64,000 nt of DNA from Magallana gigas (GCF_963853765.1 NC_088861.1:15438001-15502000); one strand, 5' to 3'. Shown: positions 6,053 to 60,287, numbered from the stretch's first letter. Translations and numbers: made by a program. Notes: generated by a model from the sequence alone, not told the origin.

Positions 6053-9000
6053 CTTACAACTGACAACACTAAACACCTGTCCAACAAATACACCGTGAAA
6101 CCAACAAAATTTCACCACAATGTTCCAGTCACAGAAATGTATCTCTTATTCAAAATATCTTAAAGCACTGTTCAATTCAACGCAATTAATATCACTTAAT
6201 TAAAACGCAGCGCATGTTTCACGTCAATAATAGAAATATTCAATGAAATAATTCACGCACACACAGACATTCAAACAAAATAACACTTGTGTACAACCTC
6301 AACTGCTCAATGTCTGTCAAAATTCTCAAATTTGTGTGATTGTTAGAATTTCATGCAAGGGGAATTGTTTAAAGGGCAAATGAATGTTTATCTTTACTAA
6401 AGTTTACTTTAAATGAGACACATCAAAAGTTTAACAAGTCCCAGTAAACACAATGAAAAAAATTAGAAAAGAAAAAATTGGATCTGCAGATATAGGCCTA
6501 TGTATGTCAACAAAAGTTTTAAACCTTTAAAATAAATAAATAGATTGATAGATAAATAGGATCCTTTTTTTAAATCAAGTCTTTATGATGACAGATATTC
6601 TATGTTTTCTATAGTTCAAAAAGCAAAATTAAATGAAAAGAAATGAATTTCATAATTTTTCTATTGATCGACCTACCAAAGAAAAAATTAACCGGAAAAC
6701 TGTTTTCATCAATGCGCTAGATATTCATTCCTTAACAAAACGATTCTACTTATGATTTCTTATGATTACAGAAAAACTTGTTTGAAAGCAAAGTTTCTTG
6801 AAAAGTAGAAATGTAAATGTCAAGCACTTCCTCATTCCGGACCAATTGACCGTATGACTATTAAAATCAAAACCTTTAATTTAACGTTTGAGTAAATTAG
6901 AAAAATGCAAAAGAAATATATTATTACATGTGTAGGTTCATGTAATTTACCACACACTGCATGTGGTTGAATGACTTGAACAGGAAAAGGAACGTCAAAT
7001 GTATATATATAACGATATACCTAACACTATTTTATTGCTTGTTATCAGAGTATATAATATATTATGCATATCCTCAGAATTGTGAAAATAAAAGGAATCA
7101 ACTAATTGTCACACGTCTTTCTATAGAAATATTTTTTTTAAAGAACTTACAATGGTTTGAATACTTGGCACTCAAAAACATGTTTAATGCGTATCACATG
7201 TACATGTATCACCTACTACTCTTTTTTAAGACTGAGAAGAAGAATAAACAAGCGTGGATCTCCGGAAAATGACTTGTACATTAAAAGTTTTCATTGTATT
7301 TGAAAAAGATAAGGAATTATTAGACAACCCTGAATACGTCACTTTGCAGCATATGGACGAATTTCGAATACAGATCAGAACCATCAACATATTATATTTA
7401 CAGCAAAGCCCAAAAATAACCCAGAAACTGAAGTATTTCCTCGCAGCACTCCTGTAGATTCTTCAGTGTCCATTTATCAGTTCTAAATAAGAAAAAGGGG
7501 CAAACTGTGTTTTATGTATTATCAGGTAATACACCGTACAACATGTTCATAAAAGGCTTTGTGAATCCAAAGCTGTATGCTTTTAACGAATTAAAGACAA
7601 TGAGTAAGACAATATATTTTGTCTTAAGAAAATGATTGTCCCTATTGTGTGAGCTAGTAGAGTATTTGCTCGTCTTGGTGTGTATGCGTCTGTGTTTTTT
7701 CGCTGTTTGTTATAGTTTGTGTAATAAATGTTATCCTTTTTAGTGCAACCTGATATAAATGCTTGAAAAAACGTTTACACTCAGTCAATATTTATTTTTA
7801 TTCTTTCTTAGCTGTTTCGCATGAATAAAATTTTCGGTTTCGTTTGAGTAATGTAATGATGTAATAATCCGAAAGGTAGTCTAATGACAAATAAGGATTA
7901 ACATACTAGTGAAGTTGCACAATCACAGTTTATACTGCGATGGGAGATTTGGTCAAGTTTTATTGAATAACGTATTAAAGCTGTTATATATGCTCAAAAC
8001 ATTATCCATTGGTGATTTTAAAGCGTCAATAATTAAAGATGCAAATAGGTATTGAGTAATACAAACAATTACAATAATAAATTTACTGAAATTGATATCT
8101 CAAACTTAAAAAGAGAGAAAAAGAGAGAAAGAGTGATTGATCAGGATGCCTTCAGGTCTCAAACAATGAATGATTTGACTATGTGTTACATGTACTATAA
8201 AGCTTTTATTTAGTTTATTAAATAATAAGACTCTAAGAATATAAATAATGAAAAAAGAAAAAATCATGTTCAATTAATGCTTTAACAAAAAATTGAGATA
8301 CGAAAAAAATGCCTGAAAAGGCATCTAATAGAGAAAATTCACAGTAAACATACTTACTATGTGACTTCCCCCAAATGTTAGATTAACATGTTGACAAATA
8401 GACCCAACACCATCCAGGAAATTGCATCATTCGTACCTAAAAAAGAGCTCCCTTAAACTCATTTCCAATACATTAAAAATTTTCATTAAAAAAAAAGATT
8501 CCAAACCTGCTCTTTCAATTTGCTTTAGTGTAATTTATTTAAGTCTTAAATAAGATGCCAATAAAGAAAGAAAAACAAATTGTCTCTTTATATTTGGAAT
8601 GAAAATTGAAAAGTTCATTTTGATAGACTTTGATAGAAGTTCTAATGTTTTATGAAAGTATATACCCTACTTGATTATAAATAAAGTGAATTGTAGGAAG
8701 AGAAACAATCAGAAGGAAAAAACTTCTGAAAAAAAGGATAAGTCATCACCAAAGTTTAAAACAACGCTCATAACTATTTGTAGAGCCAATAATATACTAG
8801 AAGCTGACGGCAAAGTATTTGAAAACCAAATAGATTTCTATATCTGATGCATTAATAAAAAGTTATGATTTATGCAGTGTAAAACACATTATAGTGTGAA
8901 TTATAGCATATATTACTGCCAACCTTTTGTTAAGGTCTAACTGATAGATTTAAAACACAACGTCAGAATTAAGTTAACGTCGCCAGCTTGTTGCTTTTAT

Positions 9001-21600: not shown

Positions 21601-24600
21601 GAAAGGAAATGTACATATATGCTCTCAGATATTTTGATCGCTTTATAAAGTGGGGGAAGGGGGAGGGGCAGAACGAAAATATTGGGAATTGGAAGTTAAC
21701 AGTGTACCCTTACCAAATCTTTAGTATATCTTGCTTAGGATTTTTTTTTTTAGTAAAATGGTATTCCATAAAGATACAATGTCAAAGATTACGTGTATGC
21801 AAATATAAGACTTCAGTATAAAATTCGAATACTTTACAATATTTATTTTTTGTTTTTCTACCGAGGGGCCATATGGTACAATATCTTTGAACGCCCATAT
21901 CAACAATTAACGAACAGCTTGTGCAGAAACTCCAGGGAAGTTTATCAGAGATGGGATAAAAGACAGAGAGTGATTTGTTAAAAATACTGTAAACGTACTA
22001 CATTTGTCTGTGCATTCTATTTAGCGCTTTTGGCGGAATGCGACTTCCGCTAAATCAAGTACATCGCGCGCTAAATGTCATGCATGTAGGTATAAGAATA
22101 GTCACATTCAAGAATACGCTAATTCAAATCCATGCCAACTTGTTCTAAAACTAATTTCCGCAAAATATCGTACATGCCAACTATAATACGTTTACAGTAA
22201 TTATTCATCACGTGATTTTTTTTTATTGTTTCTTTGATATTCTCTATAAGTATATGATAATTATAAGAATTATTACAAGGCAATTTTTATCTCGCATCCA
22301 ATATTAGCTCTCGGTCGCTGTATATCATCCTTCGAGCCTGACGGCTTTGGAGCTGATATACAGCAACCTCGGGCTAACATAGGATGCGAAATAAAACTTG
22401 CCTTGTAATTATATTAATCTATATAAATAACACCGTGTGTCCGTACGCCACGTGACATCATAATTAAAAATGACGTTGTTTTAGAGGGATGAATGACGTA
22501 GAACGAATAAGTAACAAAATACTTTAGTTGAAAAGTGTAGAGTTGTAGATGTAAATAACTTTTTTTCATGAATTGAGAAAAATATATGTTCGAAATGGAA
22601 GGTATGTTTGTTAATCTTCAAGGAACTGGTTTCCATGCGTAAATTTGTTGACGTCTTGCAGTAAATGTGTTGTGCGGGTTACAATAATAATTTTTACCGA
22701 AAAGATTTAAGGTCAAGATATAGTAAATGGAAGGTGCCTACAGGTTTATAAAACTAAAGATATAAATTGTTTTAATGATGCTTCAAAATAATGAAAAATG
22801 AAAAAAATGAAAAATCATGTTTTAAACTGTCTCTCTCAATGAAATATAAAGGAAAAAAGGAACTAATTTCGGAGTTTTGTCCATTTTTGACTCATAAAAT
22901 ATACCTACAATGCCTACAGTCTCTCCAAAAACGGAATTAAACAAGCTCTTGACTTCCTCTGTAAAATGATGTCAAATCGAATATGGATATCGGGATTACT
23001 TTTCCAATAATTTAACATAGAACATCCATAAATTGTTCAATGTTCTATGTAATTCCTTTAAAGCCGTAAAGTACTGGAAAAAAATCTTCAAATCAATTAT
23101 GATGTCATTATGGTTTAAGCACCTAAAAGACACTCTGGAATCATTTACTAGATCTTGGCCTTAACAAAGGACCTGGTAAAACATGTGTTAGAACGAATCT
23201 GACATTATTTACGTTGGTTATTATGATTTTTTTCCTCGCAAAGGTTCGGGGATGAAACACACAACTCGTTGGATAAATATCATAATTAACAATTTAAATG
23301 GTGAGAGATCCTATATGTATATAATACTTTATTTTAAAATTGTTTATGTTTACAGGTTTACATAATATGATCTCAAACTGATGTCAAATCTTGTATAAAT
23401 ATATTGATGGTGAAAACTAGATTTATTAAATCACATTCATTTTTTTTCCTTAAGGACAATGCCCACGAAATGGTGAGTACCACAACTATTTATTAGACAG
23501 AATTGTTTTATCTTCAATTAATAATGAGTAATTTATTCGTACACTGAATGCTTCCAACTTTTTTTTCCAGAGGAAAATAGTTCAGTTACTAGTTGTGACG
23601 GATCAACGAAGTATGGATCATATATCAGCATTGACTCCTATAAAATCAACCGTCCATGTACCTGCACTTTGACCTCATCGTTTGTTGGTACTTTACTTAT
23701 GTTATCGAAAACAGCGGTCGAATTTGGATGCAAAACTCAAGTTATCGTTAAAAACGAAATTGTATTTGGCTGCCGTCTTGAGAAGTTGTCATCACAATCA
23801 GTAGACGTCATAGTCAGTCAAAATGTGAATATACAAATAGCATACATCCTACCTTATTCATCAGGAGAGTTCTATCATTGTATTGGATTTCAACAAAATG
23901 GTATATATTTATCTTTGTATCAGTTACCGCATTTCAAAAGTCTTCTTTGACTGAAGCAGTAATATATAAATGAAAGAATGAAATAACTTAAAGTTTAAAA
24001 CTTTTTCTCGTATGATGAACCTACATGTACAAGTGTTTGACTTCAATATATCAAGTTGTTCCAATTAAAAAATGCATGTTCATGTGCATGTAGTCAAACA
24101 TGATTGTTAAGAATATTCCTTTTTTCATTTTGGGTTTGTTTGTTTTGTTTTGTTGTTTTGTTTTTTTGTTGTTGTTTTTTTTTTGGGGGGGGGGGTGGGG
24201 GGGGGGGGGTTGGAAAGGATTTTCATTTTAACGTCCGACATTTTGCCTCTTTGACTTCAAATGAATTTTCACTAATATAGCTAATAGTATTGATACATAG
24301 TTTAAACCCCCAACCAAGGAGTATTCAAGTAAAGTTTTGATGCAAAAGTTGCCTTTTTATAATAAAAAGCGTATTTCAGCTGTATATATTTGCACTAAGT
24401 GATACTACGAAAAATAAAACAATTCGCATAATAACAGTACATGTATATTGTTACCATAAAAGTATAAAGAACATAAAAAATCAAATTTTTACGAAATGAC
24501 GCATTTCATTTTTTTTTTTTTTGGATTAGTCAAACATTTGATTCATATCCAAATTCCTAAGTATACGAATTCTTTTTATCAGTTTTTAATGAAATATATT

Positions 24601-27600
24601 ATTGCAAATTATCTTTTGATAACCTGTAAATTGACTTAAAGCTGTCAAAGCATGTCCACACTTTACTACTTTTTTGCATTTCGAAATAGTTTATCGATAA
24701 TAAAAGTAAGTTTTTGATTATTCTCATCAAATTGCTATCGGATAAAATGTGTTGAAATATAAGAAGTGTAGGCAGTAATTCTGATGCAGGTGTTTCATAG
24801 TTTATTGACAAGTAATGTTCATGTATAAGTAAAGTTCTTTCAAAAGAATAAGTGTTGATATTATCATTTAAAAAGTTGTATGATTTCCTCAGAATTATTT
24901 GTGCGTACGTTGTTTTAAGCTGAAGAACGTTTTATTCTCATACAATGTCATTTTTAAGGCGTCGAGCTAATGCTCGGCAGCCTTCTAGCGATCGTCTGGA
25001 TTGGCAATCGTCCAAATATTCATGCTCTGCACCGCCTTTTAAATGCGCTTAAGAAATAAGTTCCTTAAAGTATTAAACGTATTACAAGATTTTTATTCCA
25101 TTTATTCAACTAAATTGTGTACAAAAAACCCAACTTTGCCTCCCTGGTTATCGACTACTCATTGCATAAGACTTCGTATGAATTAGCTTAATCAAGAAAT
25201 GGCGAATGAATAAGGTGTAAAAATTCACTAAGTATTATTTAAGTTCATCGATTACATTTTAATTGTAGACCGTGCCCGATAGAAATAAAATTTGATATGT
25301 AAATTTATTTGTTATCGGGCACGGCCTTCAAAATAAATGTAAGCGATAAACGTATCTAGTGATTTTGTTGCAATAAATGAACACGATAATGCAGTTGGTT
25401 TAGTCGAGCATTTTAGATAGCACGTGTTGTGAATTTGTTTGTAAACAATCGCACCAAAGGTAATCTTGTTTCAAACGGGAATCATGCTGATTCAAAACGG
25501 GCGAACGTAAGATCAAGATCTATGACATCGATCGCTGATAAAATCAAAAAAAACTCAATTTTTTGGTTGGTTTGTTTAATTAAATTAAATCCTTGTTTTT
25601 ATATTTAATGATACTTAAAGAGGCGAGAAAAGGTTCACAAATAGATGATGCAGCAAAACTGACGTCTATGTTGTTGTGAGACATGTGCTTTGACAACACA
25701 TAATTACCATTTCAATGTAATATTGAAAACTAAGTTTACCTCAAATTCGCACAGCCGATTACAAAATAATGACCTACACATCAAACATTTCAAGCAACCG
25801 ACAGTACAACGCTAATAGTTAGCTAGTCAGTAGACATTATTCATAATGTATTGGTATATATTTTTTGTTCCACGCTTTAAGAAACGGCAATTTAGGAATA
25901 AATTAGAAACAAGAACAATTCGTAGTAATAACAATTCAATAGACATGTGACATGTTTAACAATTCAAATTAAATAGACCTTTCTTTTTTTATTGTAATAC
26001 CCTTTTAAAGTGATTTATTGATATTGTTCTTATTTCACTTTATGTACCGCGTTTAAGCAACAGCCATGCCAAGGTTATCTTGCAAAATTAACGATACCCT
26101 AAAGGCTTGTTTTGGGTTTTTTTATCATAAATAATTTCTCTTCCTGTGTTTTCAGGTGGATCGAATGGCAATTTTAGTGTGATGTGTGGATATCCATCAG
26201 ATACAGCAACAACAACAACCTCACCAACAACAATTTTCACAACCACTTTAAATTCAACACAGTTGTCACATGCATCGTCTCCTATTCCATCATCAAGGGA
26301 ATCTTCATCTGTAGTAAACACCATCAAGAAAACAGATGTCACCCTATCCTCAAGCACGATAAATGTCAGTTATGATTCCTTGTCGATTGAGACAACGCAA
26401 GATGCTCCGGAAATGTTATGTAAATATACATCTAATCGGTGTTTCTTTGTAACGAATTTACATAGGTTTTCACTATTTTGGGGGGAACACTAAAACATAA
26501 AACTTATTTGTTTATAAATTAAAAATTAATTCATAAGGCACCAGTTTATAACTAAATTTAATATTAGCAACAACGCGCTATTATGACAACGATGTGCATT
26601 TGCATGTATTATAAGACTAAGAAAAAAATACGGACGAAATTATACATGTCTGATCGTTTAATTATTTAAAGAGGCTTGCTCCTTAGGTGTTGGGTCACGT
26701 ATCGTCGGAAAATTCTGCATCACATATTTATGTTAGTAGTATATTTATATTTTACTGTACCAAATAAACTATATTGAATAAAAAAAAATTTAAATTACAT
26801 TTTTACAGAATTTAGTGAGGGACTATATTTTGTGGCGGAAGGTTTTCAAGAAGAAAATAGACAATTTTCATAATTCAATAGTTTTAGAGTACACAGTTAC
26901 TTTAGCTTCCTGATTGTTTGTGCAAACCAAACTTCTGGATAGTGTATAACGATATATTCGTTTTGTTCTATAAACATATCTAAACAATATGTTGATATTT
27001 CTTTGGATATATTTCGGCATATTAAGCTTAGATTTCATAGAAGTTATGAAAAAATAAACTCCAATTTTGGCCTAAAATTAGCTTTTTTCAAGCTATATCT
27101 CAAATTTTTAAGATGTGACCCCTACTTGTTTTACTTTTAAATGATACATCAAATGTATGTTTATTTGTATGCAAAGTGTTGGACAGATGACATAACTATA
27201 CTTTTTTTACTTGCGTTATAATTTGAATATATCAAACATTTGTAACATCTGTTGTTGTGTTCATTATGTACTGGCCTTTGAAGCCACCAGTAAAGCAAGA
27301 GATTTCAAACTTTGACTTAACTTTACTTTTATAGTCAATACATGTGTTTAAATTCATACTGTATTAAAATCATTACTAAATAATAGTTCAAACTGTATAT
27401 ATTTGTTTGATTTCTTCAAACTATAAATTTCTATGTCAAATTTAAGCAAAAAATTCAGGAAAATTATCATTTCTGTTTGAGGTCCTATATTTTAATAAAA
27501 TGTCATGTGACATGGGTCACAAAATTAATACAATGAACATTTTAGGTCCCCATCTTTATATCAAAAACGTTTTCTGATAAATGACATTACTATTATTTCA

Positions 27601-28502
27601 GGTCCCAACCTCCTTAAATTTCATTGTTTTAACCCACCTTAACCCACCCATCTTTTTATGGTGTTTCATACGATAAGCAACTGTGATTTCTGAGATGTTA
27701 TTTATCATATGAAAAATTTTATAGGATATTTAAATGAAGAAACCAAAACTAAAGACACGTTTTCTTTCCTTTTCAGATATCATCGCTGGTTCTGCTGGTG
27801 GAGGTGCAATCATACTTGCACTTATTATTTTCATTTTAGTATTGATAAAAAGGTCTGTATTTTTATAGTCGATTCACTTAAAAAAACCAAATTATTTAGA
27901 ATTCTTTAGGTTATTACAAAAGAGTACTTATCTTAAAAATTGAAAACTTTGTTCACCCAAAAAGATTATGAATGGTATCAGAAGTAAGTTAATTTTTCAG
28001 AACGAGGAGTACAAGAAACAAAAATGGATCCACTGAAGCGGACATGGCGCGTACAAATGAAGTTTTTGACAGCAACCCTGAATTGCCTGACAACCCATTA
28101 TATCTCACTTCACAACCTATGGACGAATTAGGGTACAGTTCAGATCAGGAAAGGCAACTTGGTTTACCGCCCACGGAATCAAAAAATAAGACAAAAATTA
28201 ACTCAGACTATGACGTTCCTCCTAACAATAAACCTATAGATCAAAGTGGGTCTTCAATGCCGGTCTACGCTGTTCCAAAAAGGAGTAAGGACCGTACACC
28301 TGAGATTAGTTCTGTCAATGTTTATGCGGAGGTATGTAAACCAAACAGAAGCACTGCAAAGGATCCGGTAAGAAAACGTAATGAAGATGGTCTTTTGTAC
28401 ATGGAAGTTGAACAAGACACTGCTGTCACAAAACAAACAAACACCAATGACAAAAATGAAATCACTGAAGGTGTCTGTTATGCCCAAATTAAGCATACTT
28501 AA
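15672..28502 (+). CDS. Gene B: intact ~414-aa type I membrane receptor (signal peptide, Cys-rich domain, S/T stalk, TM, NPxY/YDVP/two-ITIM tail)
   Basis: Exons 15672-15726 (MKGPLWMFVISIFFTTTN), 23455-23472, 23571-23900, 26156-26419, 27777-27852 (YIIAGSAGGGAIILALIIFILVLIKR), 28001-28502. Total 1245 nt with no internal stop. The link from exon 1 across a 7.7-kb intron is inferred. Confidence 0.82.
17068..17100. repeat. (GA)n microsatellite
   Basis: agagagagag run with one interruption. Confidence 0.9.
18030..19140 (+). repeat. Unclassified interspersed repeat; inverted copy at ~34355-34830
   Basis: gctaccttcataacccgcatgaatca and gtagatttcggcgaatcgataaacggggcgtgtagatttcagtctggctgttt have reverse-complement counterparts at 34357-34730. 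Confidence 0.55.
19358..19455. repeat. Minisatellite of ~22-nt units (gatctcgttattacgagaaaa)
   Basis: About four degenerate, partly self-complementary units. Confidence 0.7.
21984..22199. mobile_element. Tc1/mariner-type MITE
   Basis: Perfect 13-nt inverted ends TACTGTAAACGTA / TACGTTTACAGTA, including the TA flanks. Confidence 0.75.
22272..22409. repeat. Near-palindromic hairpin element (~55-bp arms)
   Basis: attacaaggcaatttttatctcgcatcc...gctgtatatca pairs with tgatatacagc...ggatgcgaaataaaacttgccttgtaat. Confidence 0.7.
22595..22660 (+). pseudogene. Possible degenerate A/D-type leader exon (or 7-nt coding alternative first exon ATGGAAG|gtatgt) ~0.8 kb upstream of the gene B micro-exon
   Basis: ATGGAAGGTATG...ACTGGTTTC resembles gene A ATGAAAGGTTTT...AGTGGTTTC at the same codon positions, with weak flank similarity. 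It contains an in-frame TAA. Confidence 0.35.
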
Positions 28503-30041
28503 GGAAAGTACATTTTATGACATTGTATATTGTAGTGTTACATTTTTCGTTTCTACTCTTAGTATCTGCAGCTTTGTTGTCTCTGGATCATACAATTATG
28601 TATTTATGTATACTCACTATCAGTTGTAATCTTTATTGATGTAGTGATCTTCTATGATAAACTGAAATAAGAAATGCAACACAATTAATTACCAGTCGTA
28701 GTTCTTGTATTAACAAACACAATAGTCTTGTATGTAAACATTTGCACGCAAGTATACATATATTTTAATATTTATCGAAGCACATGTATTATTGGATTTT
28801 CTCGATAATATTATTGTATATTTTTCATGTTTTTCTTAAGCTTTGTCTCTTAAGGTTATACATGTATGTAAAAAAAAAACTCTTCTTTAATGCAGTGTCT
28901 ACTTGACACATTAGAATGTATTAATAATAGCCAATAAATACATATTTTTCACGATTAATTATGTTTGTATGAATTATCAATATTATTTGTCACAACATTC
29001 AAAAACATCAAATATTTGAAAATGATAAGACATAATAAAGATAACTAAAAGCAATACCATCTATTATGTAAAGTCGGCATTAGTAAAGGTACAGTGACTA
29101 AATATTAATATTCAAAAAACGACGATAAGCATCAATGATCAATATGTTTTTTAGGATGTTATAAAAATGTTGAAAATTTAAAAGAAAATGAGGTGTAATT
29201 TACAGCTTTGCATAATATGCAACCTTTATTTCCGTTCGATACATTATAAGGTTGTAGGAAGTCAATATCATTTAACAAAATAAACATAAAACGATGTGTG
29301 TTAAACTATATAAAAAAAAATGCCGAAATAAATAGATATGGGAAATGTACAAAATACCCAAGACTGGTAAAACTGTGATGTCGACAATATGCCTGTTAAT
29401 GTTCTGAAATGTTGTGAATTAGGATAATTTTTTTATTATATTGCGTTGTGTCGTCAATTGACCTAGTTTCAACTAATAAATAAAAGTCAACAACGTATAA
29501 TGCCCAGGATTTTTAAAGATTTTCCAGAAGATAATGAGCTTATTGGATTAAGGAAATGGCCATATTTGTTTAAATTTACTCTTAAAGTGGTTATTAATCT
29601 TTGTTAATACAACAATTTACAGATAGCCTATTACGCCGTAGAGAAATCAATCAAATGAAAACTTTTTTTAAAAACGGAACTGACTAGAAATTAAATATTC
29701 AAATACCGTCTAATTGGGTCGGCTCGGAAAAAAATTATTATGACTATGGGGTGTCTTAAAATTATCTATGTGTATGTATATACTGTACATGCATGTGCAT
29801 ACACATATATTCATAATAAGTAAATATGAAATAAACAATACACAATTTTTGCTATAAATGTGGACGCTATCGAGCAGCGTTCCTATGTAATATTTGTTGT
29901 TTTTATTCATTTTGCACTTTTGTTTGCCATTCGGACAAAAGTAGTGAGGAAGAATATAAAAGTAATATTTTTGTAACTGTGTGTAACAAAAAGGTTTTAT
30001 GTATTTTCCTTAATTACTCAAGTTTAACGTATTTATTTTAG

Positions 30042-30219
30042 AAACAAACCTGGGACTCAGATTGATACAAGAATGTTATATATTATGTATTATAATGCAC
30101 CTTCGAGGTGGGAATGAACGAAATGAACAGTACTTGGAAATACGGTGTCGGGAGAATCTGAAAACCAGTACGACTCTATCTCACGAGGGAATAATAACAT
30201 GAACACAAATACCTTATAA
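30042..30219 (+). pseudogene. Orphan, decayed ITAM-type terminal exon (A/D type) downstream of gene B
   Basis: CTTGGAAATACGGTGTCGGGAGAATCTGAAAACCAGTACGACTCTATCTCACG (from 30133) is nearly identical to the gene D last exon and reads LGNTVSGESENQYDSISR...*. It is preceded by a ttttag acceptor; the 5' half is scrambled with a stop. Confidence 0.8.
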
Positions 30220-31210: not shown

Positions 31211-34200
31211 ATGAAAGGCCCTCTTAGTGTGTTTGTTCTCACTGTATTTTTTGTGACAGCGAAAGGTAAGATTAGTTGATTTATGATTCCCTTAAGTGTT
31301 ACATAACAAGAGGGATTATCTCCCTAAAAAAAGAGAATTGTCCCTGTTTTACAGAAATAACATTCTCGTTAATGTGAGATACTCAAACATTTTTTCCATT
31401 GATACATGTATATTGCTTTCGTTAAACACAAGAATATTCACAAGAATATTTTTAATGATAAGAAGACACTTCCAAGTCTGCTTCAAACAATAACATTGAG
31501 AGCAGCTTGATATGAATTAAAAGTTACCCAGTGGACTTTTTACAGAAACCATTTTAGGTCATAAACCAGCCCTTGTGCTAACTTATTATGTTTGTTTACA
31601 TTTATTTGAATTTTTAAAATTTGAAATGCAAAAAATTAAGAAAATCTCGCCAAAAATACGGGGTGGTTTTATTTAATGTATTAATAGTGGGATGTTTCCC
31701 TTTAGGCTAAAAATTGATGCGTCCAATTCATTCTCTAACAACAGTCTTGTATTTAATTCAATCGAATAAAGAATAAACAAAATGAATATGGTTTCACATT
31801 GTTTGGTACATCAATTCATTCTTGCGAGTATAGGGTTGCTAGCATTGCAGAAAATGCATTTTCCGGATATGCGGTTATATAAATCACTAATAAAATCACA
31901 AAAATATCATTGTTTTACTAGTGTTGATGAACAAAGCCGATTCTAATTAATTTTACAAATGATATTTTTATAAAATTCCTTTCATAATTTTACCTCTATA
32001 TCAATTATTTTTAATTAATTAGATCATTTTTTTAATACCGGTCCGATTTCCTATGGGGGCCTTTTCGAAAGTAATAATTTTACTATTAAGGGTCTTTCTG
32101 CGCTTAACAATATTCATATATTTTCCCAATGGATTTGTCTTTCTGCTTAAGGGATTTCTTTTTCTTTTAAATATATGAAAACTATTGTATCAAATAAGCA
32201 AAGCGTGAACAATTTTAAAAAAAAATTGTCCATTTGAAGAAAACGGGGTTTATGAAACAAAACACCATGCTTCTGCAAATGAATTCTATGCTGGTTCTGT
32301 TCCAGACTATATAATTATATCATTATATCACTACTTCAATCCAAGCTGATGATTCTGAGTGCTAACGTTAAGAATCCAACATCAATTATTACCAACATTC
32401 TACCATTATTTATAGTAGACACATGGGTGACAACTAGTTGCAATGACCCCCATCCTTCGTTTTTAAATCTGGATTAGACACGCACATGGTAAGCAGCCCT
32501 TTTTCTTTAATACCTCGTGCCCATTGGTTTTTTTTACATCTACATCCCATTTATCTTTTTAAACCTAAAGGGATAATACATGGACTATAAATAAAGCAAT
32601 GTTAATCGCTTTTATATTAAAATGAATGATTGTTTATGTCATAAAACAAATAAAATTCGATGCAAAGATCGGAACACCTATTAGTAAACAAAAACTTGGT
32701 AACTTTATACTTGTTCGTTTGTAATAAAAAAAAAACCTATAAATTAGTTGGTGTTGCTAAAGTATGCCACTGTAGAAGCCATCAAAATAGTTTTAAATTT
32801 GATATACATTGTAATAAGTTTTCGATATCATGTAACGTTTTAATTTTTTTAATCAAATTTGTTAAATTTGTTATAAGGAATCTAATTTGTTGAAGTCGTA
32901 ATAACAAAATAAATCTGTTATAACATTCAATCAATTTATTTTTGTCATATAGGAGTATATTCTTTTCTGCTCTAAGGCCCATATACTCTGCTTGTTAACG
33001 CACAAAAATATCGCTTCATCCTTAAACATGACATTTTATTTACCTTGACAATGCTATTTTACCAAAATATTAAAAAAAAAACATATTATGGGATATTACA
33101 TCCAGTTAGAAAAAAAATTCAAGAGAGGTAACTCTAATTCATCGATAAAAGAGAAAATGCAGGTGCTGATTTTTTTTATTTTCGAAGCACTTCGTTGCAA
33201 ATGCCCATAAACAGCTTTTTTATTATATGACCTTACACTAATCTTTATGAAACATTGTAGAAAAATAAATTTATGTAATTATATTTCTTTTAGGGCAATG
33301 TCCATCGAATGGTGAGTACAGCTACTCATAGTTTTTTGAGTAATTTATATATAATTTCAATTTAATATTGATATATTTGTCCATTTACTTAATGCTTTAT
33401 ATTTAATGTTCAGTTGAAAACAGTTTAATTGCTAGCTGTGACGGATCGAAGAAATATGGACCAAATGTCTACGCTGATTTCTATAGAATTAAGCGTCCAT
33501 GTAATTGTATCGTGACTCCGTCGTTTGTTGGTGAACTGCTTGTGACATCGAAGGAAGTAATCATAAATTTGTGTGATACAAGAGTGAGCGTTTCACCCGG
33601 TATTAGTTTTGGATGTCCATTGCCATCCTTTTCATCTTATACGTTAAACGTACAAATCAACAAAACAGTGAATATACAAGCAGAATATATACCACCATCT
33701 ACAACAGGGACATTTTATCACTGTGTTGGATTTCAGCAAAATGGTAACTATGCATTAACGATATTTAAAAATAAAATCCAAACCGTAGAAACCAAACTAT
33801 ACACGTAAAAATGCAACAAGTGTCATACAAAATTACCCCATATCAAGGTTTCTCCCTGTGTATGTGAAGGTTTTGTTGGAATTGTAACAACAAGAATCGG
33901 AAAAATAAGTACGATTCTTATTGTTACATTTCCAAAACAACCTTTACATACATCGCAAGAATCCTGAATCAGGTATGATTTTGTTTGAGAATTGTTGTAA
34001 TTTTCGTGTGTAATTTGGTTGCGTCGGTTGGAAATTTGCAGCCTTCAATCTACTAAACTGCAAGGGCACCGCTAAGCGGAGCATCCCATCGCGACATAAA
34101 TTATTGTAGGACTGGGAATGCACTATTTAGTAACAGACATGTAAATGTATCAAACAGAATAAAGTATTTTTCTTCCTAAAATCACTTTAAACTCCTAATG

Positions 34201-37200: not shown

Positions 37201-38296
37201 TGTTGTCATGAAATAATTAAAGAGGAAATAACTTACAAATATTACTTAGCTAACGATTCTTAAACCAACCTTCTCAGTCTGAAGAGTTCACTACAGGTTA
37301 ACAATAATTATGCGGCTAATTATAGATAGTTTTAAATTCCCTGAATTTTAAAACTTTAATGTTACACATCTATACTCAACAACATTTTGGTTACAATATA
37401 TTATCCTTGACATATCCAAGATAAGGGTTGATACAGTAATCGCGTAAAATAAAAATTCGACATTATTCTGTTTTTATTGGGTTATTTTTAATGATTTTTT
37501 TTAAATTTTATTAATTTATTATTGCTTTTTATTAGACTATATTTTGTATCATACATGTATATTTAAACCAAATAAAAAGAAACACGTTTCTTTTTTCAGA
37601 TATAATCGCCGGTTCTGCTGCCGGGGGAGCGCTTATAATTGTTTGTCTGATCATTATCACTATAATATTGATAAACAGGTCAGTGTCAATATATCACTTT
37701 ACTAAGAATATAAAGGCTAGATTTTGTTGATCGTTAACTTGCTATGTTTTGAATTTACGAGAAAAAAAAGTTAGCAATTTGATATTAGTTTGTAAAGATT
37801 ATAAAGTTTTCCTGGTAAATTTGTCAGATCAAGGAGTGAAGGAAACAAAAATATATCTTTGGAAGCGAATATGGCGCATACAAATGAGGTTTTCGATAAA
37901 AACACTGAATTGCCTGACAATCCTTTATATCTCTCGTCACAACCTTTAGACGAACTTGGGTACATTTCGGATCAGGAAAAGCAACATGATTTACCACCGA
38001 CGGATTCAAAATCGGAAACTAAAATTCTCTCAAACTATGACGTTCCTCCTAACAATAAACCTATTGATAATAATGAATCTTCAATGCCGGTGTATGCAGT
38101 TCAAAAAAAAAGTAAAGTACAAACGCCTTCGGTCAGTACTGGAGACGTTTATGCGCATGTGTGTAAATCAAACAGCAAATTTCGGTACGAAAACATGAAA
38201 GTTGAAAAAGACGCCGCTGTAGCAAAGCTATCGAACACCGATGACAAAGATGAACTCACTATAAGCACATGTTATGCCGAAATAAAGTGTCCTTGA
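31211..38296 (+). CDS. Gene C: intact ~401-aa type I membrane receptor with NPxY/YDVP/ITSM tail
   Basis: Exons 31211-31265 (MKGPLSVFVLTVFFVTAK), 33294-33311, 33414-33743, 35695-35949, 37600-37678 (TM), 37828-38296. GT-AG introns, total 1206 nt, open throughout. The tail is clearly paralogous to that of gene B. Confidence 0.86.
36532..36852. mobile_element. MITE with ~55-bp imperfect TIRs in gene C intron 4
   Basis: aatcgcagcttctcgggcctttccggcaagctcggaaaaacac... versus ...gtgtttttccgagtctcccggaaaggcccgagaagatgcgatt. Confidence 0.75.
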
Positions 38297-51800: not shown

Positions 51801-54443
51801 TGAAATATTAAAACATTTTCGAATAGTAGTTAAACAGATATATTATACAAATGTAAATTATTTTTGAAGTCTTTTTATACATATCTCCATCCTTCGTTCT
51901 AGCTTTCATGTAAAATTTAGCTAGCAAGTCGTCTGACTTCTCGCACTCGAAATTTACGAAGCCTCCGCTTTCGACTCGAGATATTCCCGAAATAGCTTAA
52001 CGGCTGTTGCAGTTACCCTGTTGAAGTGTTCCTTGCATCAACATTTTCCATTATAACTTTCATTTCCGCGTCATTAATTGTCGCAAAACGACCGTTTACT
52101 TTAACGTCTGCAACTTCCATCTTTGTTGTTTGTTTTCGCGGAGAATGTTTTTGGTTGGTTGGGGTGAATCACGCCAGCCAATCAAATTCTTTTTTAACAT
52201 TAGAGCAAAATTTCCCTTATCTATATTTAGAAAGTACAGGTCAATCCGAGTTTTTAAAGCTTATTTTTAGAAAGTACAGGTCAATTCGCATTTTTATACT
52301 TCGACACCTGATATCAAAAGAAGTAATGATAGAATTTGTTATAATGCATGAAAATAATATTAGATTTTATTAAGTAGTTGTATTGAGAAACTGAAATCGT
52401 AAATCGGTAAGGTAATGTCGTCAAATAAATTTCTTGTGGTATGAAAATGCCTGTATCTTAAATGCCAGATTTCTTTATGAAATGCTAGATAAGTAATACA
52501 TATATCTTTCTTCAGAAAGCACGGTTCATAATGAGTTTGATCTATTTTCAGGTCAATGCCCACCTAATGGTACGTTTTGTAAACTGTATATTACATAATA
52601 CGTATAAAAGTAAGCATTTATCTCAAGTTTATCTGAATAACAACATGATGCGCAAATAAGTAAAAATGTGTATTTTTTATTTCCCTTATTTTCAAGTTGG
52701 ATACCTTGCTGTAACCAGTTGTGATGGATCAACCAAAAATGGACCATATATTTACATTGACTTCTATAAAATCAACCGTCCATGCTACTGTACGGTGATC
52801 ACGTCTTTTAATGGTGATCTGCTCGTAACGTCTATGAAAGGAATCGGTCGTATATGCGAAACACAAGTAACCGTTGTAACCGTTTACACTTACAGATATA
52901 TGTTTAATTGTCAGGCATCAGAAGTATCTGCCGTTTTACATGTCGAAATCAATCAATCGGTATCCGTACTAGCTGAATACTCATCACTTTCTACATCAGG
53001 AGCGTTCTATCATTGTTTGAGATTTAACGAAAACGGTACAATTACTTACTTGTCGTTCATTTTTAAGTTATGATTGGAGTTAAGGTTTGTAATGTTCGTC
53101 TTTTGAATAATTTGACCGATTTATAAACTTCCTCTTTAATGTTACTAAAAGTATAAAAAAAAAAAAACCCAATCATATTTACATGTATGAAAATGATAAA
53201 AAATACCGCTTTTTTCACATGTATCATTTATACAACATGGATACATGTATTATGCTGCTTTTTACAGTGAAGTTGACCTTTATGAAATGCAAATTAGTTT
53301 TACGATGATTGTTATCATAATATCTATGTTCCAAAGTATGATTTTCAATCTATTGCCAAAAAATGAATGAATGTTTCAAAAGAAAGCAGTTTTCAAATGC
53401 ATGTACTTGTTCTACAGGCTTGGATTTATTATTACATTTTGTTCATACTCTCAGGGGGTTTAGGTGGAAATCTTAGTGTAGTATGTTGAAGTAACCATTC
53501 AGCAGAAACAACATCAATGGAAACATCTACTACAACCGCTTCGTCTACTACACGATTTATAAGTACAACTTCTGAGTTGTCATCAGTGGAACTTATAACT
53601 ACATCTGCAATAAATGAGAATATATCGGATGCTACTGGGTCAACTGCTGCTACTTTGTCGGAGGAAAATAAATGTGATTCTTTAATTGGTAGATTTTTTT
53701 TTTAATATATGATATCTAAAAATCCAAACCTGCTGATTATTGTCAACTTTACGAAAGAAGTTTCGTTTAAACTATTGTCAAATGCAATAAGTTCATGTAG
53801 AACCTGTAGAATTTGGAAAATACCTTAAACGTTTCTTTTCTTATTTTAATAGACAGTATATTCTCACTCTGTAACGCATTATCGAAAACTAAGTTATAAA
53901 TACAGAAAATATGCTTAATTACATAGAATATCTTATCTATCATCTTCTTGTGCAGATAAGGGTCTTTTTAGGGATGATGTCGATATGCAGGGCTGATTTG
54001 ATCCGTATAGCACCCCTTTTGTAATTACTGTTTTTCCGCATCCATATTAAGGTCGTATTTTAGCAAACGATTTTTTCTTATTTCACTCTATTTCAGCCGA
54101 GTCACTTTTGTCCTTACAAATTTCGTTGGCTCTATTCGTGATGATTTCGACAGTTTCAACAATATTGAATATATATTTTTGTAGATACATCAAAACAAGG
54201 TATGTTTAATAAAAGTTTATTTTTATATTTGTACATCATTCACAGACATGATATGATAAAGAAAATCTTTTATGATCTGTTTGATTTGTATCGAACTATG
54301 TGTGGTTTTTATTTATTTTTTAGCTTTACCTAATGGATAACAAAACGTGATATTAGATAAAGAACATATACGATTATGATAACAAATCTTGAGAGTTTCT
54401 TATCTAAAATAACCTTACAAAAGTAACACCCATTTTGACGTCA

Positions 54444-54660: not shown

Positions 54661-55150
54661 TTGCAGTGTTATATAAAACAAATTATTTCATGGATGATTT
54701 AACCATGTATTAAGTCCAACATCAACATGAAATAAATGTATAGCTATTATTTTTACACCACTACAAAATATGGTGTGTATATTTCAAAAACATTGTCATA
54801 ATAACTTTAAAAAGTAATCTGATAACAAAGTTATAAATGTAAGCAAGCTATGTTTTTGCAAGCCAGCATTGAGTTTACATGGGCATATTTCAAGGAAATT
54901 ATATTTTTTCACAATAGAAAGAAATCTTGGAACGGGAAATCTAACTGTAAAGGTATAAAAGACCATCGAAGTGGGACAGCAACTAATGCTGAAACCTACA
55001 CAGAACTTGGAAATACGGTGTCAGGGGAATCTGAAAACCAGTACGACTCTATCTCACGCCAGGAAAACTACATAAACACGAATGTCTTTTAAACTTTTCT
55101 TACAGGTGAATTCATGTTACTTGCAATTGGACTCAATATTGGAAGTAGTA

Positions 55151-59900: not shown

Positions 59901-59955
59901 ATGAAAGGTTCATGTTGTGTGATTGTGATCGGTATGTTTTTTGTGACAACAAATG
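59901..59955 (+). CDS. Signal-peptide first exon of a probable fifth paralog (gene E); downstream exons not found in the window
   Basis: MKGSCCVIVIGMFFVTTN-G|gtaagt, 55 nt, phase 1. It is homologous to exon 1 and the upstream promoter sequence of gene B. Confidence 0.65.
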
Positions 59956-60287
59956 GTAAGTTGATCGATCATTAAGAGTCAAATAGTAAACGTACATAAT
60001 GTTTCTTCTACTGCGACAGATTTTTTTATCAACTGACGTGTTTTTATCTTTTGTTAGAAAGATATAATATGCGTTTTAATTTTACTTCCTTTCTTAGTTA
60101 ATTCATATCCTGTGTGTCTAATGTATTGATATGACCTCAAACATTTGGTTTGATGATGAAAGGAAGAACAAAATAACTTCCTAAATTAAATTATGTGTCA
60201 CATCGTGCATGTAATATGTATAGAATAATGTCAATAAGATAATGTTAACACCAAAACTTACTCGGTTTTGTATGAATTAAATATTAA

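What the first reader, a model, noticed from the sequence alone, without database searches (positions are those of the whole stretch)
23455..26190. Unrecognised ~125-aa eight-cysteine extracellular domain with a fixed scaffold and hypervariable segments
The consensus from four paralogs is QCxxN..SCxGSxKxG..Y.DFYKINRPCxC.V..SFxGxLL..(variable)C.T.V(variable)C(variable)..V.I.Q.V...AEY....SG.FYHCxGFQQNGG.NGNLSVxC. It has no Trp and no Ig C-W-C signature, and it is beta-rich with a conserved N-x-S sequon before the last Cys. The N-terminal half and C-terminal end are conserved, while the three segments around the 5th and 6th Cys differ almost completely between paralogs. A CUB-like jelly-roll fold is a guess. 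Inference: the variable segments form a diversifying ligand-binding face.
Basis: partly seen in the sequence, partly recalled or inferred. Interest (0 to 1): 0.7.

Follow-up and report, generated by a model that had tools for sequence, protein, structure and literature searches.

The report
Oyster receptor head with CUB-like fold
The eight-cysteine domain is real, expressed and matches no sequence family; it is predicted to fold like a CUB domain and heads about 37 tandem oyster membrane receptors with inhibitory (ITIM) or activating (ITAM) tails, a layout like vertebrate paired immune receptors.

Summary
Observation confirmed. Window 23455-26190 holds three exons: an 18-nt micro-exon, a 331-nt main exon and the start of exon 4. 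They encode a ~127-aa, Trp-free, eight-Cys domain. Spliced RNA contigs from 4 runs (3 studies) confirm the junctions. Gene B is an intact 414-aa type I membrane protein.

The family is larger than four copies. About 37 domain exons lie on one contig, all on the + strand, across ~0.9 Mb. Sequence relatives are almost all oyster proteins named "uncharacterized", plus one abalone protein with four repeats.

There is no Pfam or PDB sequence hit, and no profile-profile match to the genome's own CUB domains. Two AlphaFold models (pLDDT 91-92) both match CUB domains best (spermadhesin 1SPP, Z 8.4).

Variability is uneven. Among recent duplicates ω is 0.36-0.72 in the N-terminal third and above 1 in the middle in 4 of 4 clades. 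A site-model test gives p=0.001. Gene conversion could inflate this.

The scan's other notes on this window (ITIM and ITAM tails) were re-checked and agree. I know of no earlier finding of this domain on other DNA.

The parts
15672..15726 (+). Gene B exon 1: start codon and signal peptide (MKGPLWMFVISIFFTTTNG)
   Evidence: tblastn with family proteins. The loose end of an RNA contig matches 15696-15725 exactly. The exon completes an intact ORF.
23455..23472 (+). Gene B exon 2: 18-nt micro-exon encoding (G)QCPRN, which carries the first Cys of the domain
   Evidence: RNA joint 23471/23570 with GT..AG ends in 4 runs. An equivalent QCxxN micro-exon was found upstream of 25 of 30 paralogs.
23571..23901 (+). 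Gene B exon 3: main domain exon with Cys 2-7 and the variable D-E, F-G and H-I loops
   Evidence: RNA contigs cover it with 0 differences.
26157..26419 (+). Gene B exon 4: the last strand of the domain (GSNGNFSVMCG, to about 26191), then a Ser/Thr-rich mucin-like stalk
   Evidence: RNA joints 23899/26155 and 26419/27779. Translation.
27777..27852 (+). Gene B exon 5: transmembrane helix (YIIAGSAGGGAIILALIIFILVLI)
   Evidence: tblastx conservation with gene C. RNA joints. ORF.
28001..28502 (+). Gene B exon 6: cytoplasmic tail with NPLY, YDVP, VYAVP, VYAEV and two ITIM-consensus motifs (LLYMEV, VCYAQI), then the stop codon
   Evidence: RNA joint 27850/27999. The same motifs recur in three oyster genera.
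11876..12214 (+). Paralog A main domain exon, interrupted by an in-frame TGA at 12023-12025. The gene continues with a stalk exon (12585-12848), a second type of TM exon (13129-13230) and an ITAM exon (13594-13752: YTEL-x8-YDSL).
33413..33745 (+). Paralog C main domain exon. The gene is the ITIM/ITSM type: signal exon 31211-31265, stalk exon from 35694, TM exon about 37602-37688, tail exon 37826-38293.
   Evidence: It is 88% identical to the M. gigas protein P0138 that was used for the model.
52696..53037 (+). Paralog D main domain exon. Its exon 4 (from about 53445) has a stop codon at 53487-53489, directly after the eighth Cys. TM exon 54087-54200 and ITAM exon 54847-55089 (YTEL-x11-YDSI) lie downstream.

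Best explanation
The stretch encodes the N-terminal recognition domain of an oyster-specific family of single-pass membrane receptors.

The domain is about 127 aa with eight cysteines. It has diverged so far that no sequence method recognises it. It is predicted with high confidence to be a roughly ten-stranded beta-sandwich of the CUB type. Four of its Cys (2, 3, 5 and 6) fall in the order and spacing of the two canonical CUB disulfides. The other four would form two extra bridges.

The domain sits on an O-glycosylated mucin-like stalk. Behind the membrane it is joined to one of two alternative tails:
- a long tail with NPxY and two ITIM-consensus motifs (genes B and C);
- a different transmembrane segment and a short tail with an ITAM (genes A and D).

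About 37 copies lie head-to-tail in one ~0.9-Mb array and evolve by birth and death. The signalling tails are conserved. The head changes about twice as fast, mostly in and around the loops flanking Cys5, Cys6 and Cys7.

Proposed working (inferred): the variable loops bind diverse ligands, either microbial or self. Ligand engagement leads to tyrosine phosphorylation, and SH2 phosphatases (ITIM tails) or a Syk-type kinase (ITAM tails) are recruited. Paired copies would then set an inhibition/activation balance, most likely in haemocytes.

Shown here: sequence, splicing and expression of gene B, family size and layout, predicted fold, motif content, and uneven ω with ω>1 in the middle part.

Not shown: ligand binding, phosphorylation, cell type and immune role.
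For: Gene model and expression:
- Gene B is an intact six-exon, 414-aa ORF.
- Spliced RNA contigs support it in 4 runs from 3 studies.

Family size and range:
- 35-41 matches, all on contig C9, + strand, 14.91-15.83 Mb.
- Only 124 hits among 1.84 billion representatives. All named hits that match the whole domain are oysters, plus one Haliotis protein with four repeats.

Fold:
- AF2 pLDDT 91.1/pTM 0.83 and pLDDT 91.9/pTM 0.86.
- VIA top hit 1SPP_A at Z 8.4 for both models, with CUB domains filling most of the top 30 rows.
- Top Atlas shape hit is a CUB cluster, TM 0.58/0.61.
- Nearest named clusters by language-model features are all CUB or CRF-BP.
- Best TM in Swiss-Prot models is bovine spermadhesin-1, 0.54.

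Tails:
- ITIM and ITAM regex hits in members from Magallana, C. virginica and Saccostrea, and in the window genes.
- An oyster ITIM receptor that signals through SHIP2 in haemocytes has been published (PMC11841013, abstract seen).

Evolution:
- dN of the head is 0.37 against 0.19 for the tail (B vs C), and 0.49 against 0.21-0.23 (A vs D).
- In ten independent close pairs, pN/pS is 0.50 N-terminal, 1.62 middle and 1.55 C-terminal.
- The IQ-TREE GY ω of the middle partition is above 1 in 4 of 4 recent clades, with p=0.006 in clade III. The N-terminal ω is 0.36-0.72.
- M1a vs M2a jointly: LRT 13.65, p=0.001, about 17% of codons at ω≈3.
Against: - No sequence-level link to CUB: Pfam none, PDB profile none, hhalign probability 0.1%. 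Foldseek against PDB gives nothing at E<0.001.
- Z 8.4 is only just above what orphan models typically reach by chance, according to the tool's own note.
- Over the whole, partly saturated family tree, ω is below 1 in every partition (0.42, 0.78, 0.47).
- Synonymous divergence differs threefold along the exon in close pairs (pS 0.14 against 0.04). This suggests gene conversion, which can create false positive-selection signals.
- Clustering of column entropy along the sequence is only marginal (p=0.06).
- Both ITAM-type copies in this window carry premature stops.
- Gene B's domain exon showed no variants in four RNA runs.
- No tissue, ligand or phosphorylation data exist.
Confidence: 0.62

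Rival explanations
1. The head is a tolerant scaffold. The variable segments are simply loosely constrained loops in a fast birth-and-death tandem family, with ω≈1 plus gene conversion. There is no adaptive diversification and no specialised binding face.
For: - ω for the whole exon in close pairs is 0.91, close to neutral.
- Only one of four clades rejects ω=1 for the middle partition.
- Whole-tree ω is below 1 everywhere.
- Uneven pS suggests mosaic histories.
- Several copies are pseudogenes.
Against: - The joint M2a vs M1a test gives p=0.001, with two clades individually at p<0.05.
- The middle-partition ω point estimate is above 1 in all four clades, while the N-terminal third is constrained in all four.
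- NG86 without a transition/transversion correction tends to underestimate ω. This last point is from general knowledge.
Confidence: 0.25
2. The domain is a beta-sandwich that only converges on the CUB shape, or shares the generic jelly-roll arrangement. It is a new mollusc fold family with no common ancestry with CUB.
For: - All sequence and profile tests against CUB are negative.
- Foldseek E-values are poor.
- Z 6-8 is common for orphan models (note).
- Non-CUB sandwiches score only 1.5-3 Z units lower. Examples are the subtilisin propeptide-associated domain, collagen-binding domains, SID1 and viral jelly rolls.
Against: - CUB entries dominate both VIA lists, and 1SPP stands about 1.3-1.6 Z above the next row in both models.
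- 98-99 of 109 spermadhesin residues align.
- Two other methods independently return CUB.
- The order and spacing of Cys 2, 3, 5 and 6 resemble CUB C1-C4. The only hhalign local match pairs the PCxC motif with the CUB CxW motif.
Confidence: 0.2
3. The family mediates self/non-self or cell-cell recognition, such as homophilic adhesion, gamete or larval-settlement recognition, or allorecognition as in the Hydractinia Alr genes. Microbe sensing would not be its role.
For: - It is a tandem, rapidly diversifying, lineage-specific membrane family with ITIM/ITAM-type tails. The Hydractinia histocompatibility complex is described the same way (bioRxiv 10.1101/2022.03.04.482883, abstract).
- No microbial-binding evidence exists here.
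Against: - Oysters are solitary and not known for allorecognition (general knowledge).
- Gene B's domain exon showed no allelic differences in four runs, unlike typical allorecognition loci.
- Nothing here discriminates between ligand types.
Confidence: 0.12

Closest known systems
CUB domain (Pfam PF00431; spermadhesin PSP-I/PSP-II, PDB 1SPP)
   Same: - Size of about 110-130 aa.
- All-beta sandwich of about ten strands. 98-99 of 109 residues superpose at rmsd 2.8-2.9, Z 8.4.
- Extracellular.
- Four Cys in comparable order and spacing.
- Often found on membrane receptors next to mucin-like or EGF modules.
   Different: - No detectable sequence or profile similarity.
- Eight rather than four Cys.
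- No Trp after the second CUB Cys; a Cys stands there instead.
- The CxYD calcium-site motif seen after the third Cys in this genome's own CUB domains is replaced by CxT.V.
- The domain is split by an 18-nt micro-exon.
Vertebrate paired activating/inhibitory receptor clusters (KIR, LILR/PIR, SIRP, CD300, Siglec-5/14, CEACAM1/CEACAM3)
   Same: - Tandem gene cluster.
- Closely related ectodomains joined to either ITIM or ITAM signalling.
- The head evolves faster than the tail.
- Frequent pseudogenes among activating copies.
- The ITAM is carried in cis, as in CEACAM3 (PMC5112662 and PMC2832619 abstracts).
   Different: - The ectodomain is CUB-like, not Ig-like or C-type lectin.
- Activating copies carry their own ITAM rather than using a charged TM residue and an adaptor such as DAP12.
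- The host is a lophotrochozoan.
- No functional data.
Hydractinia Alr family (bioRxiv 10.1101/2022.03.04.482883 / PMC9546547)
   Same: An invertebrate, lineage-specific tandem family of type I membrane proteins with highly divergent heads, recognised only by structure prediction, and with ITAM/ITIM-type tails.
   Different: - Alr heads are Ig-like and these are CUB-like.
- Alr genes have genetic evidence for allorecognition and this family has none.
Oyster ITIM receptor CgNCAM1 (PMC11841013)
   Same: An oyster type I receptor with two cytoplasmic ITIMs. It is reported to act through SHIP2 in haemocytes, which shows that the downstream machinery exists in oysters.
   Different: It has an Ig/FN3 ectodomain, is a single conserved gene, and is not part of a paired ITAM/ITIM array.
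CDCP1 and other CUB-bearing membrane receptors (neuropilins, Neto, Kremen)
   Same: A CUB-type head on a single-pass membrane protein. In CDCP1 the cytoplasmic tyrosines are used for signalling (general knowledge, not tested here).
   Different: - Those have recognisable Pfam CUB or CDCP1_CUB domains.
- They have no ITIM/ITAM pairing.
- They are not expanded in tandem.

Membership tests
CUB domain (PF00431) | Match to the Pfam CUB profile at or above the gathering score | tested here: not met
   No CUB hit even at E<=10 for the window exons, or at E<=1 for six full-length members.
CUB domain (PF00431) | Profile-profile similarity to bona fide CUB domains | tested here: not met
   hhalign of the 41-sequence family alignment against eight CUB domains of the same genome gives probability 0.1% and E 0.56.
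CUB domain (PF00431) | Ten-stranded beta-sandwich that superposes on solved CUB structures | tested here: met
   Two AF2 models have 1SPP_A as top hit, with Z 8.4, 98-99 residues aligned and rmsd 2.8-2.9. Neuropilin, C1s, MASP, cubilin, TSG-6, PCPE-1, Kremen and Neto CUBs score Z 6-7. The Atlas CUB cluster gives TM 0.58/0.61. The models are predictions, not solved structures.
CUB domain (PF00431) | Four conserved Cys forming C1-C2 and C3-C4 disulfides | tested here: inconclusive
   Cys15, 36, 60 and 74 of the model have CUB-like order and spacing: 21/24/14 residues against 26/27/22 in the genome's own CUBs. I could not read model coordinates, so the pairings are not verified. Two paralogs that lost Cys4 keep Cys1.
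CUB domain (PF00431) | Ca2+-binding acidic triad or YD motif after the third Cys (present in a subset of CUBs) | tested here: not met
   The family consensus after the equivalent Cys is C-N/D-T-x-V. The genome's own CUBs have C-x-Y-D there. This correspondence rests on spacing, not on a significant alignment.
Paired ITIM/ITAM immune-type receptors | Inhibitory members carry the ITIM consensus [SIVL]xYxx[IVL] in the cytoplasmic tail | tested here: met
   Gene B has LLYMEV and VCYAQI. Gene C has TCYAEI, an ITSM-like motif. The same pair of motifs occurs in Magallana, C. virginica and Saccostrea members.
Paired ITIM/ITAM immune-type receptors | Activating members carry or recruit an ITAM (YxxL/I-x6-12-YxxL/I) | tested here: met
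   Gene A has YTEL-x8-YDSL and gene D has YTEL-x11-YDSI. P0021, P0045, P0148 and P0113 also have one. Caveat: A and D carry premature stops in this assembly.
Paired ITIM/ITAM immune-type receptors | Closely related ectodomains shared by both tail types within one gene cluster | tested here: met
   A, B, C and D alternate in one 64-kb window with 41-52% identical heads. The whole array is in one orientation.
Paired ITIM/ITAM immune-type receptors | Tyrosine phosphorylation, SH2 phosphatase or kinase recruitment, and opposing effects on immune cells | not testable with these tools
   This needs biochemistry in haemocytes.
Immunoglobulin superfamily domain | Cys-Trp-Cys core and Ig sandwich | tested here: not met
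   There is no Trp in the domain, and no Ig entries among the top structural matches.

The most novel reading that the evidence does not exclude
Oysters carry a germline-encoded, diversifying paired receptor system. It has about 37 tandem genes with inhibitory ITIM and activating ITAM partners. Its variable recognition module is a sequence-orphan CUB-like domain rather than an Ig or lectin domain. This would be an independent, lophotrochozoan invention of the KIR/Ly49/LILR logic.
Probability: 0.4. Interest if true: 0.8.

Novelty: new variant of a known kind. Interest (0 to 1): 0.62.

Why it matters
Paired activating and inhibitory receptor clusters with fast-evolving heads are a hallmark of vertebrate innate immunity. 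They have only rarely been documented outside deuterostomes and cnidarians.

This family would show the same genomic and signalling logic in a mollusc, built on a CUB-type head that no sequence database recognises. It gives oyster immunology a concrete set of candidate variable receptors. That is relevant to OsHV-1 and Vibrio disease in aquaculture.

It also gives domain databases a new family to define, and offers a test case for convergent evolution of receptor pairing.

Tried and rejected
- **Pfam:** nothing on the exons or on full-length members beyond sub-threshold transmembrane/low-complexity hits such as TMEM154 and EphA2_TM.
- **PDB sequence profile search:** 0 hits at E<=10.
- **Foldseek against PDB and Swiss-Prot models:** no E<0.001. 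Only the VIA all-against-all search was informative.
- **hhalign against the genome's own CUB domains:** negative.
- **Non-mollusc hits in the profile search:** a bacterial repeat protein, fish ICAM5 and a chytrid protein match only about 30-45 profile positions, repeatedly. I judged them spurious and did not follow them.
- **Ancestral-state (SLAC-type) site counting:** I did not reconstruct ancestors another way. I used independent sister pairs and likelihood models that sum over internal states instead.
- **Fetching the whole 0.9-Mb array to type every tail:** Tail types are therefore known only for the four window genes and for database proteins.
- **DNA of the M. gigas ortholog P0138:** not on record. 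A C. angulata locus (L061) shows the same exon layout but was not used for selection tests.
- **Cys1-Cys4 covariation as a test of disulfide pairing:** uninformative, because paralogs with Cys4 changed to Tyr keep Cys1.
- **Literature:** searches by LOC identifiers and by oyster plus ITIM/ITAM terms found no description of this family.
- **Column-entropy clustering:** only marginal (p=0.06).


Full report
**What is there**

The window is AT-rich animal DNA with introns. It lies at G000:C9:15438001-15502000 of a 564-Mb, 29-contig assembly. The nearest proteins are from Magallana (Crassostrea) gigas and angulata at 87-95% identity. Another follow-up of this scan calls the genome Pacific oyster; I did not verify that.

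The finding's coordinates cover three exons of one gene, here called gene B:
- an 18-nt micro-exon, 23455-23472, encoding (G)QCPRN;
- a 331-nt exon, 23571-23901;
- the start of the next exon at 26157, encoding GSNGNFSVMCG.

**Gene model and expression**

Family proteins from the databases anchor the rest of gene B:
- signal-peptide exon, 15672-15726;
- Ser/Thr-rich stalk, the remainder of exon 4, to 26419;
- transmembrane exon, 27777-27852;
- cytoplasmic exon, 28001-28502.

The six exons form an intact 414-aa ORF.

Contigs from four public runs in three studies were laid on 23300-29200. Two runs are declared RNA-Seq and two are guessed to be RNA.
- They skip exactly the four predicted introns. 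Three of the joints are reported with GT..AG ends. The 26419/27779 joint is displaced by a 2-nt mismatch.
- They cover the main domain exon without a single difference.
- One contig runs from the end of the signal exon (exact match to 15696-15725) into an alternative acceptor at about 23356. That isoform would meet a stop codon.
- The other contigs break exactly 18 nt before the micro-exon donor. This is what an assembly graph does at an alternative acceptor.

So the domain is transcribed and spliced as read.

**Family**

The window holds four copies. The genome holds many more.
- A profile of the window copies finds 35 matches.
- A broader profile finds 41 matches, about 37 of them domain exons.
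- Every match is on contig C9, on the + strand, between 14.91 and 15.83 Mb.
- A QCxxN micro-exon precedes the main exon in at least 25 of 30 copies inspected.

An exhaustive HMMER search of 1.84 billion representative proteins gives only 124 hits.
- The named hits that match the whole domain are oyster proteins from M. gigas, M. angulata, C. virginica, Saccostrea cucullata and S. echinata. All are called 'uncharacterized'.
- One Haliotis rufescens 'mucin-5AC-like' membrane protein carries four tandem copies of the domain.
- A few non-mollusc hits match only 30-45 profile positions, repeatedly. They look spurious.

**Fold**

No sequence method recognises the domain:
- Pfam gives nothing at E<=10.
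- A profile search of all PDB chain sequences gives nothing.
- A profile-profile comparison with eight CUB domains from this same genome is negative, at probability 0.1%.

AlphaFold2 models are confident:
- The M. gigas ortholog of gene C (P0138:19-148, 41-sequence alignment) gives pLDDT 91.1 and pTM 0.83.
- An ITAM-type member (P0021:19-145, 27 sequences) gives pLDDT 91.9 and pTM 0.86, with the same strand order.

Structure searches point to CUB:
- Foldseek against PDB finds nothing below E 0.001.
- The exhaustive VIA search puts the spermadhesin CUB domain 1SPP_A first for both models. Z is 8.4, with 98-99 of 109 residues aligned at rmsd 2.8-2.9.
- Most of the next 30 rows are CUB domains, at Z 6-7. 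They include neuropilin, C1s, MASP, cubilin, TSG-6, PCPE-1, Kremen, Neto2, enteropeptidase, TMPRSS6, Gpr126 and the alpha-2-macroglobulin/complement CUBs.
- The ESM-Atlas shape search ranks a CUB cluster first, at TM 0.58/0.61.
- The language-model feature search returns only CUB or CRF-BP families among named clusters.
- The best TM among Swiss-Prot models is bovine spermadhesin-1, at 0.54.
- AlphaFold-DB clusters add uncharacterised lophotrochozoan proteins at TM 0.55-0.69, from scallop, mussel, Lottia, Capitella, Lingula and Biomphalaria.

Cys 2, 3, 5 and 6 have the order and roughly the spacing of the four CUB cysteines. The only local hhalign match pairs the family's PCxC with the CUB CxW, but that match is not significant.

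I conclude that the fold is CUB-like (about 0.8). Common ancestry with CUB is likely but not shown. By sequence criteria this is not a member of PF00431.

**Context: two tail types**

Genes B and C have a Gly/Ala-rich transmembrane helix and a long tail.
- Gene B's tail carries NPLY, YDVP, VYAVP, VYAEV, LLYMEV and VCYAQI. The last two fit the ITIM consensus.
- Gene C keeps TCYAEI, which is ITSM-like.

Genes A and D use a different transmembrane exon and a short tail with an ITAM: YTEL-x8-YDSL in A and YTEL-x11-YDSI in D.

Both tail classes recur in Magallana, C. virginica and Saccostrea proteins, so the pairing is old within oysters. This agrees with the scan's other notes on this window, which I re-checked on the translations.

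In this assembly both ITAM-type copies are interrupted:
- A has a TGA inside the domain exon, at 12023-12025.
- D has a stop at 53487-53489, directly after the eighth Cys. This could mean a pseudogene or a secreted head-only product.

A relic ITAM exon lies downstream of gene B, at about 30127-30216.

**Is the variability uneven, and is there an excess of amino-acid change?**

Across 28 paralogs, column entropy behaves as follows:
- It is highest in the D-E loop before Cys5, in strand F and the F-G loop around Cys6, and in the H-I loop before Cys7.
- It is lowest in strands C and D and in the short helix.
- Clustering along the sequence is only marginal, at p=0.06.

*Head against tail.* The head's dN is about twice that of the tail:

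| Pair | Head dN | Tail or TM dN |
|---|---|---|
| B vs C | 0.37 | 0.19 |
| A vs D | 0.49 | 0.21-0.23 |

*Independent close pairs.* Ten phylogenetically independent paralog pairs with low synonymous divergence give pN/pS 0.91 overall. By region:

| Region | pN/pS |
|---|---|
| N-terminal 44 columns | 0.50 |
| Middle | 1.62 |
| C-terminal | 1.55 |

*Codon models.*
- One-ratio models (IQ-TREE GY), fitted per recent clade, give ω 0.36-0.72 for the N-terminal part.
- The middle part gives ω 1.27-6.2 in all four clades. Only clade III rejects ω=1 (p=0.006).
- I wrote an M1a/M2a likelihood with fixed relative branch lengths that sums over internal states. It gives LRT 13.65 (p=0.001) for the four clades jointly, with about 17% of codons at ω≈3. 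Clade I gives p=0.036 and clade III gives p=0.023.
- Exploratory posteriors highlight model residues 47, 54, 58, 106 and 108. Residues 77-82 get moderate values.

*Caveats.*
- Synonymous divergence differs threefold along the exon, a sign of gene conversion. Conversion can inflate site-model tests.
- Over the whole saturated tree, ω is below 1 in every partition.
- I could not access model coordinates. That the D-E, F-G and H-I loops lie at the same end of the sandwich is inferred from strand alternation only.

**Known or new**

Full-text searches found no description of this family. They used the gene identifiers and oyster plus ITIM/ITAM terms. ITIM signalling itself has been reported in oyster haemocytes for an Ig-type receptor (PMC11841013). 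I rate the domain a new variant of a known kind: a sequence-orphan, eight-Cys CUB-like module. Its deployment as the head of a paired ITIM/ITAM tandem family is the unusual part.

**Limits**

- Ancestral reconstruction was not available, and I did not attempt it by other means.

Noticed in passing
window 12023-12025 and 53487-53489: Both ITAM-type paralogs in the window are interrupted. A has a TGA inside the domain exon. D has a stop codon immediately after the eighth Cys, which would leave a secreted head-only protein or a pseudogene.
   Followed up: partly
window 23356-23454: An alternative 3' splice site about 99 nt upstream of the micro-exon is used in RNA contigs of several runs. Joined to the signal exon it reads into a stop codon, so it is a non-productive isoform, or possibly a regulated one.
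   Followed up: partly
window 29995-30216: A relic of the ITAM-type last exon (…GNTVSGESENQYDSISR…) lies downstream of the ITIM-type gene B. It has stops upstream and has lost the first YxxL. This suggests an ancestral gene with both 3' ends, or a decayed activating neighbour.
   Followed up: partly
window 24876-25466 (intron 3 of gene B): RNA-run contig depth is in the hundreds to thousands here, with many loose ends at 24949-24951. A perfect short inverted repeat lies around 25268-25325. It looks like a transcribed repeat or MITE-like element.
   Followed up: no
window 24128-24223: A long T/G-rich simple repeat ending in a poly-G run. The reads tool skips it as a repeat.
   Followed up: no
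window 7229-7361: An isolated fragment resembling the ITIM-type cytoplasmic exon (…LDNPEYVTLQHMDE…) lies upstream of gene A. It is far from any domain exon and is probably a relic.
   Followed up: no
window 59901-59960: Signal-peptide exon of the next family gene. Its domain exon lies just beyond the window end (G000:C9:15503633). Introns between the signal exon and the micro-exon are 2-9 kb in this family.
   Followed up: partly
loci L001-L030 (domain exons of the array): In close paralog pairs, synonymous divergence is about three times higher in the N-terminal third of the exon than in the C-terminal third. This fits patchy gene conversion among tandem copies.
   Followed up: partly
AlphaFold-DB cluster hits: Uncharacterised proteins of scallop, mussel, Lottia (including ZP-domain and SUEL-lectin proteins), Capitella, Lingula and Biomphalaria contain a similar sandwich at TM 0.55-0.69. 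There may be a wider lophotrochozoan set of divergent CUB-like domains.
   Followed up: no
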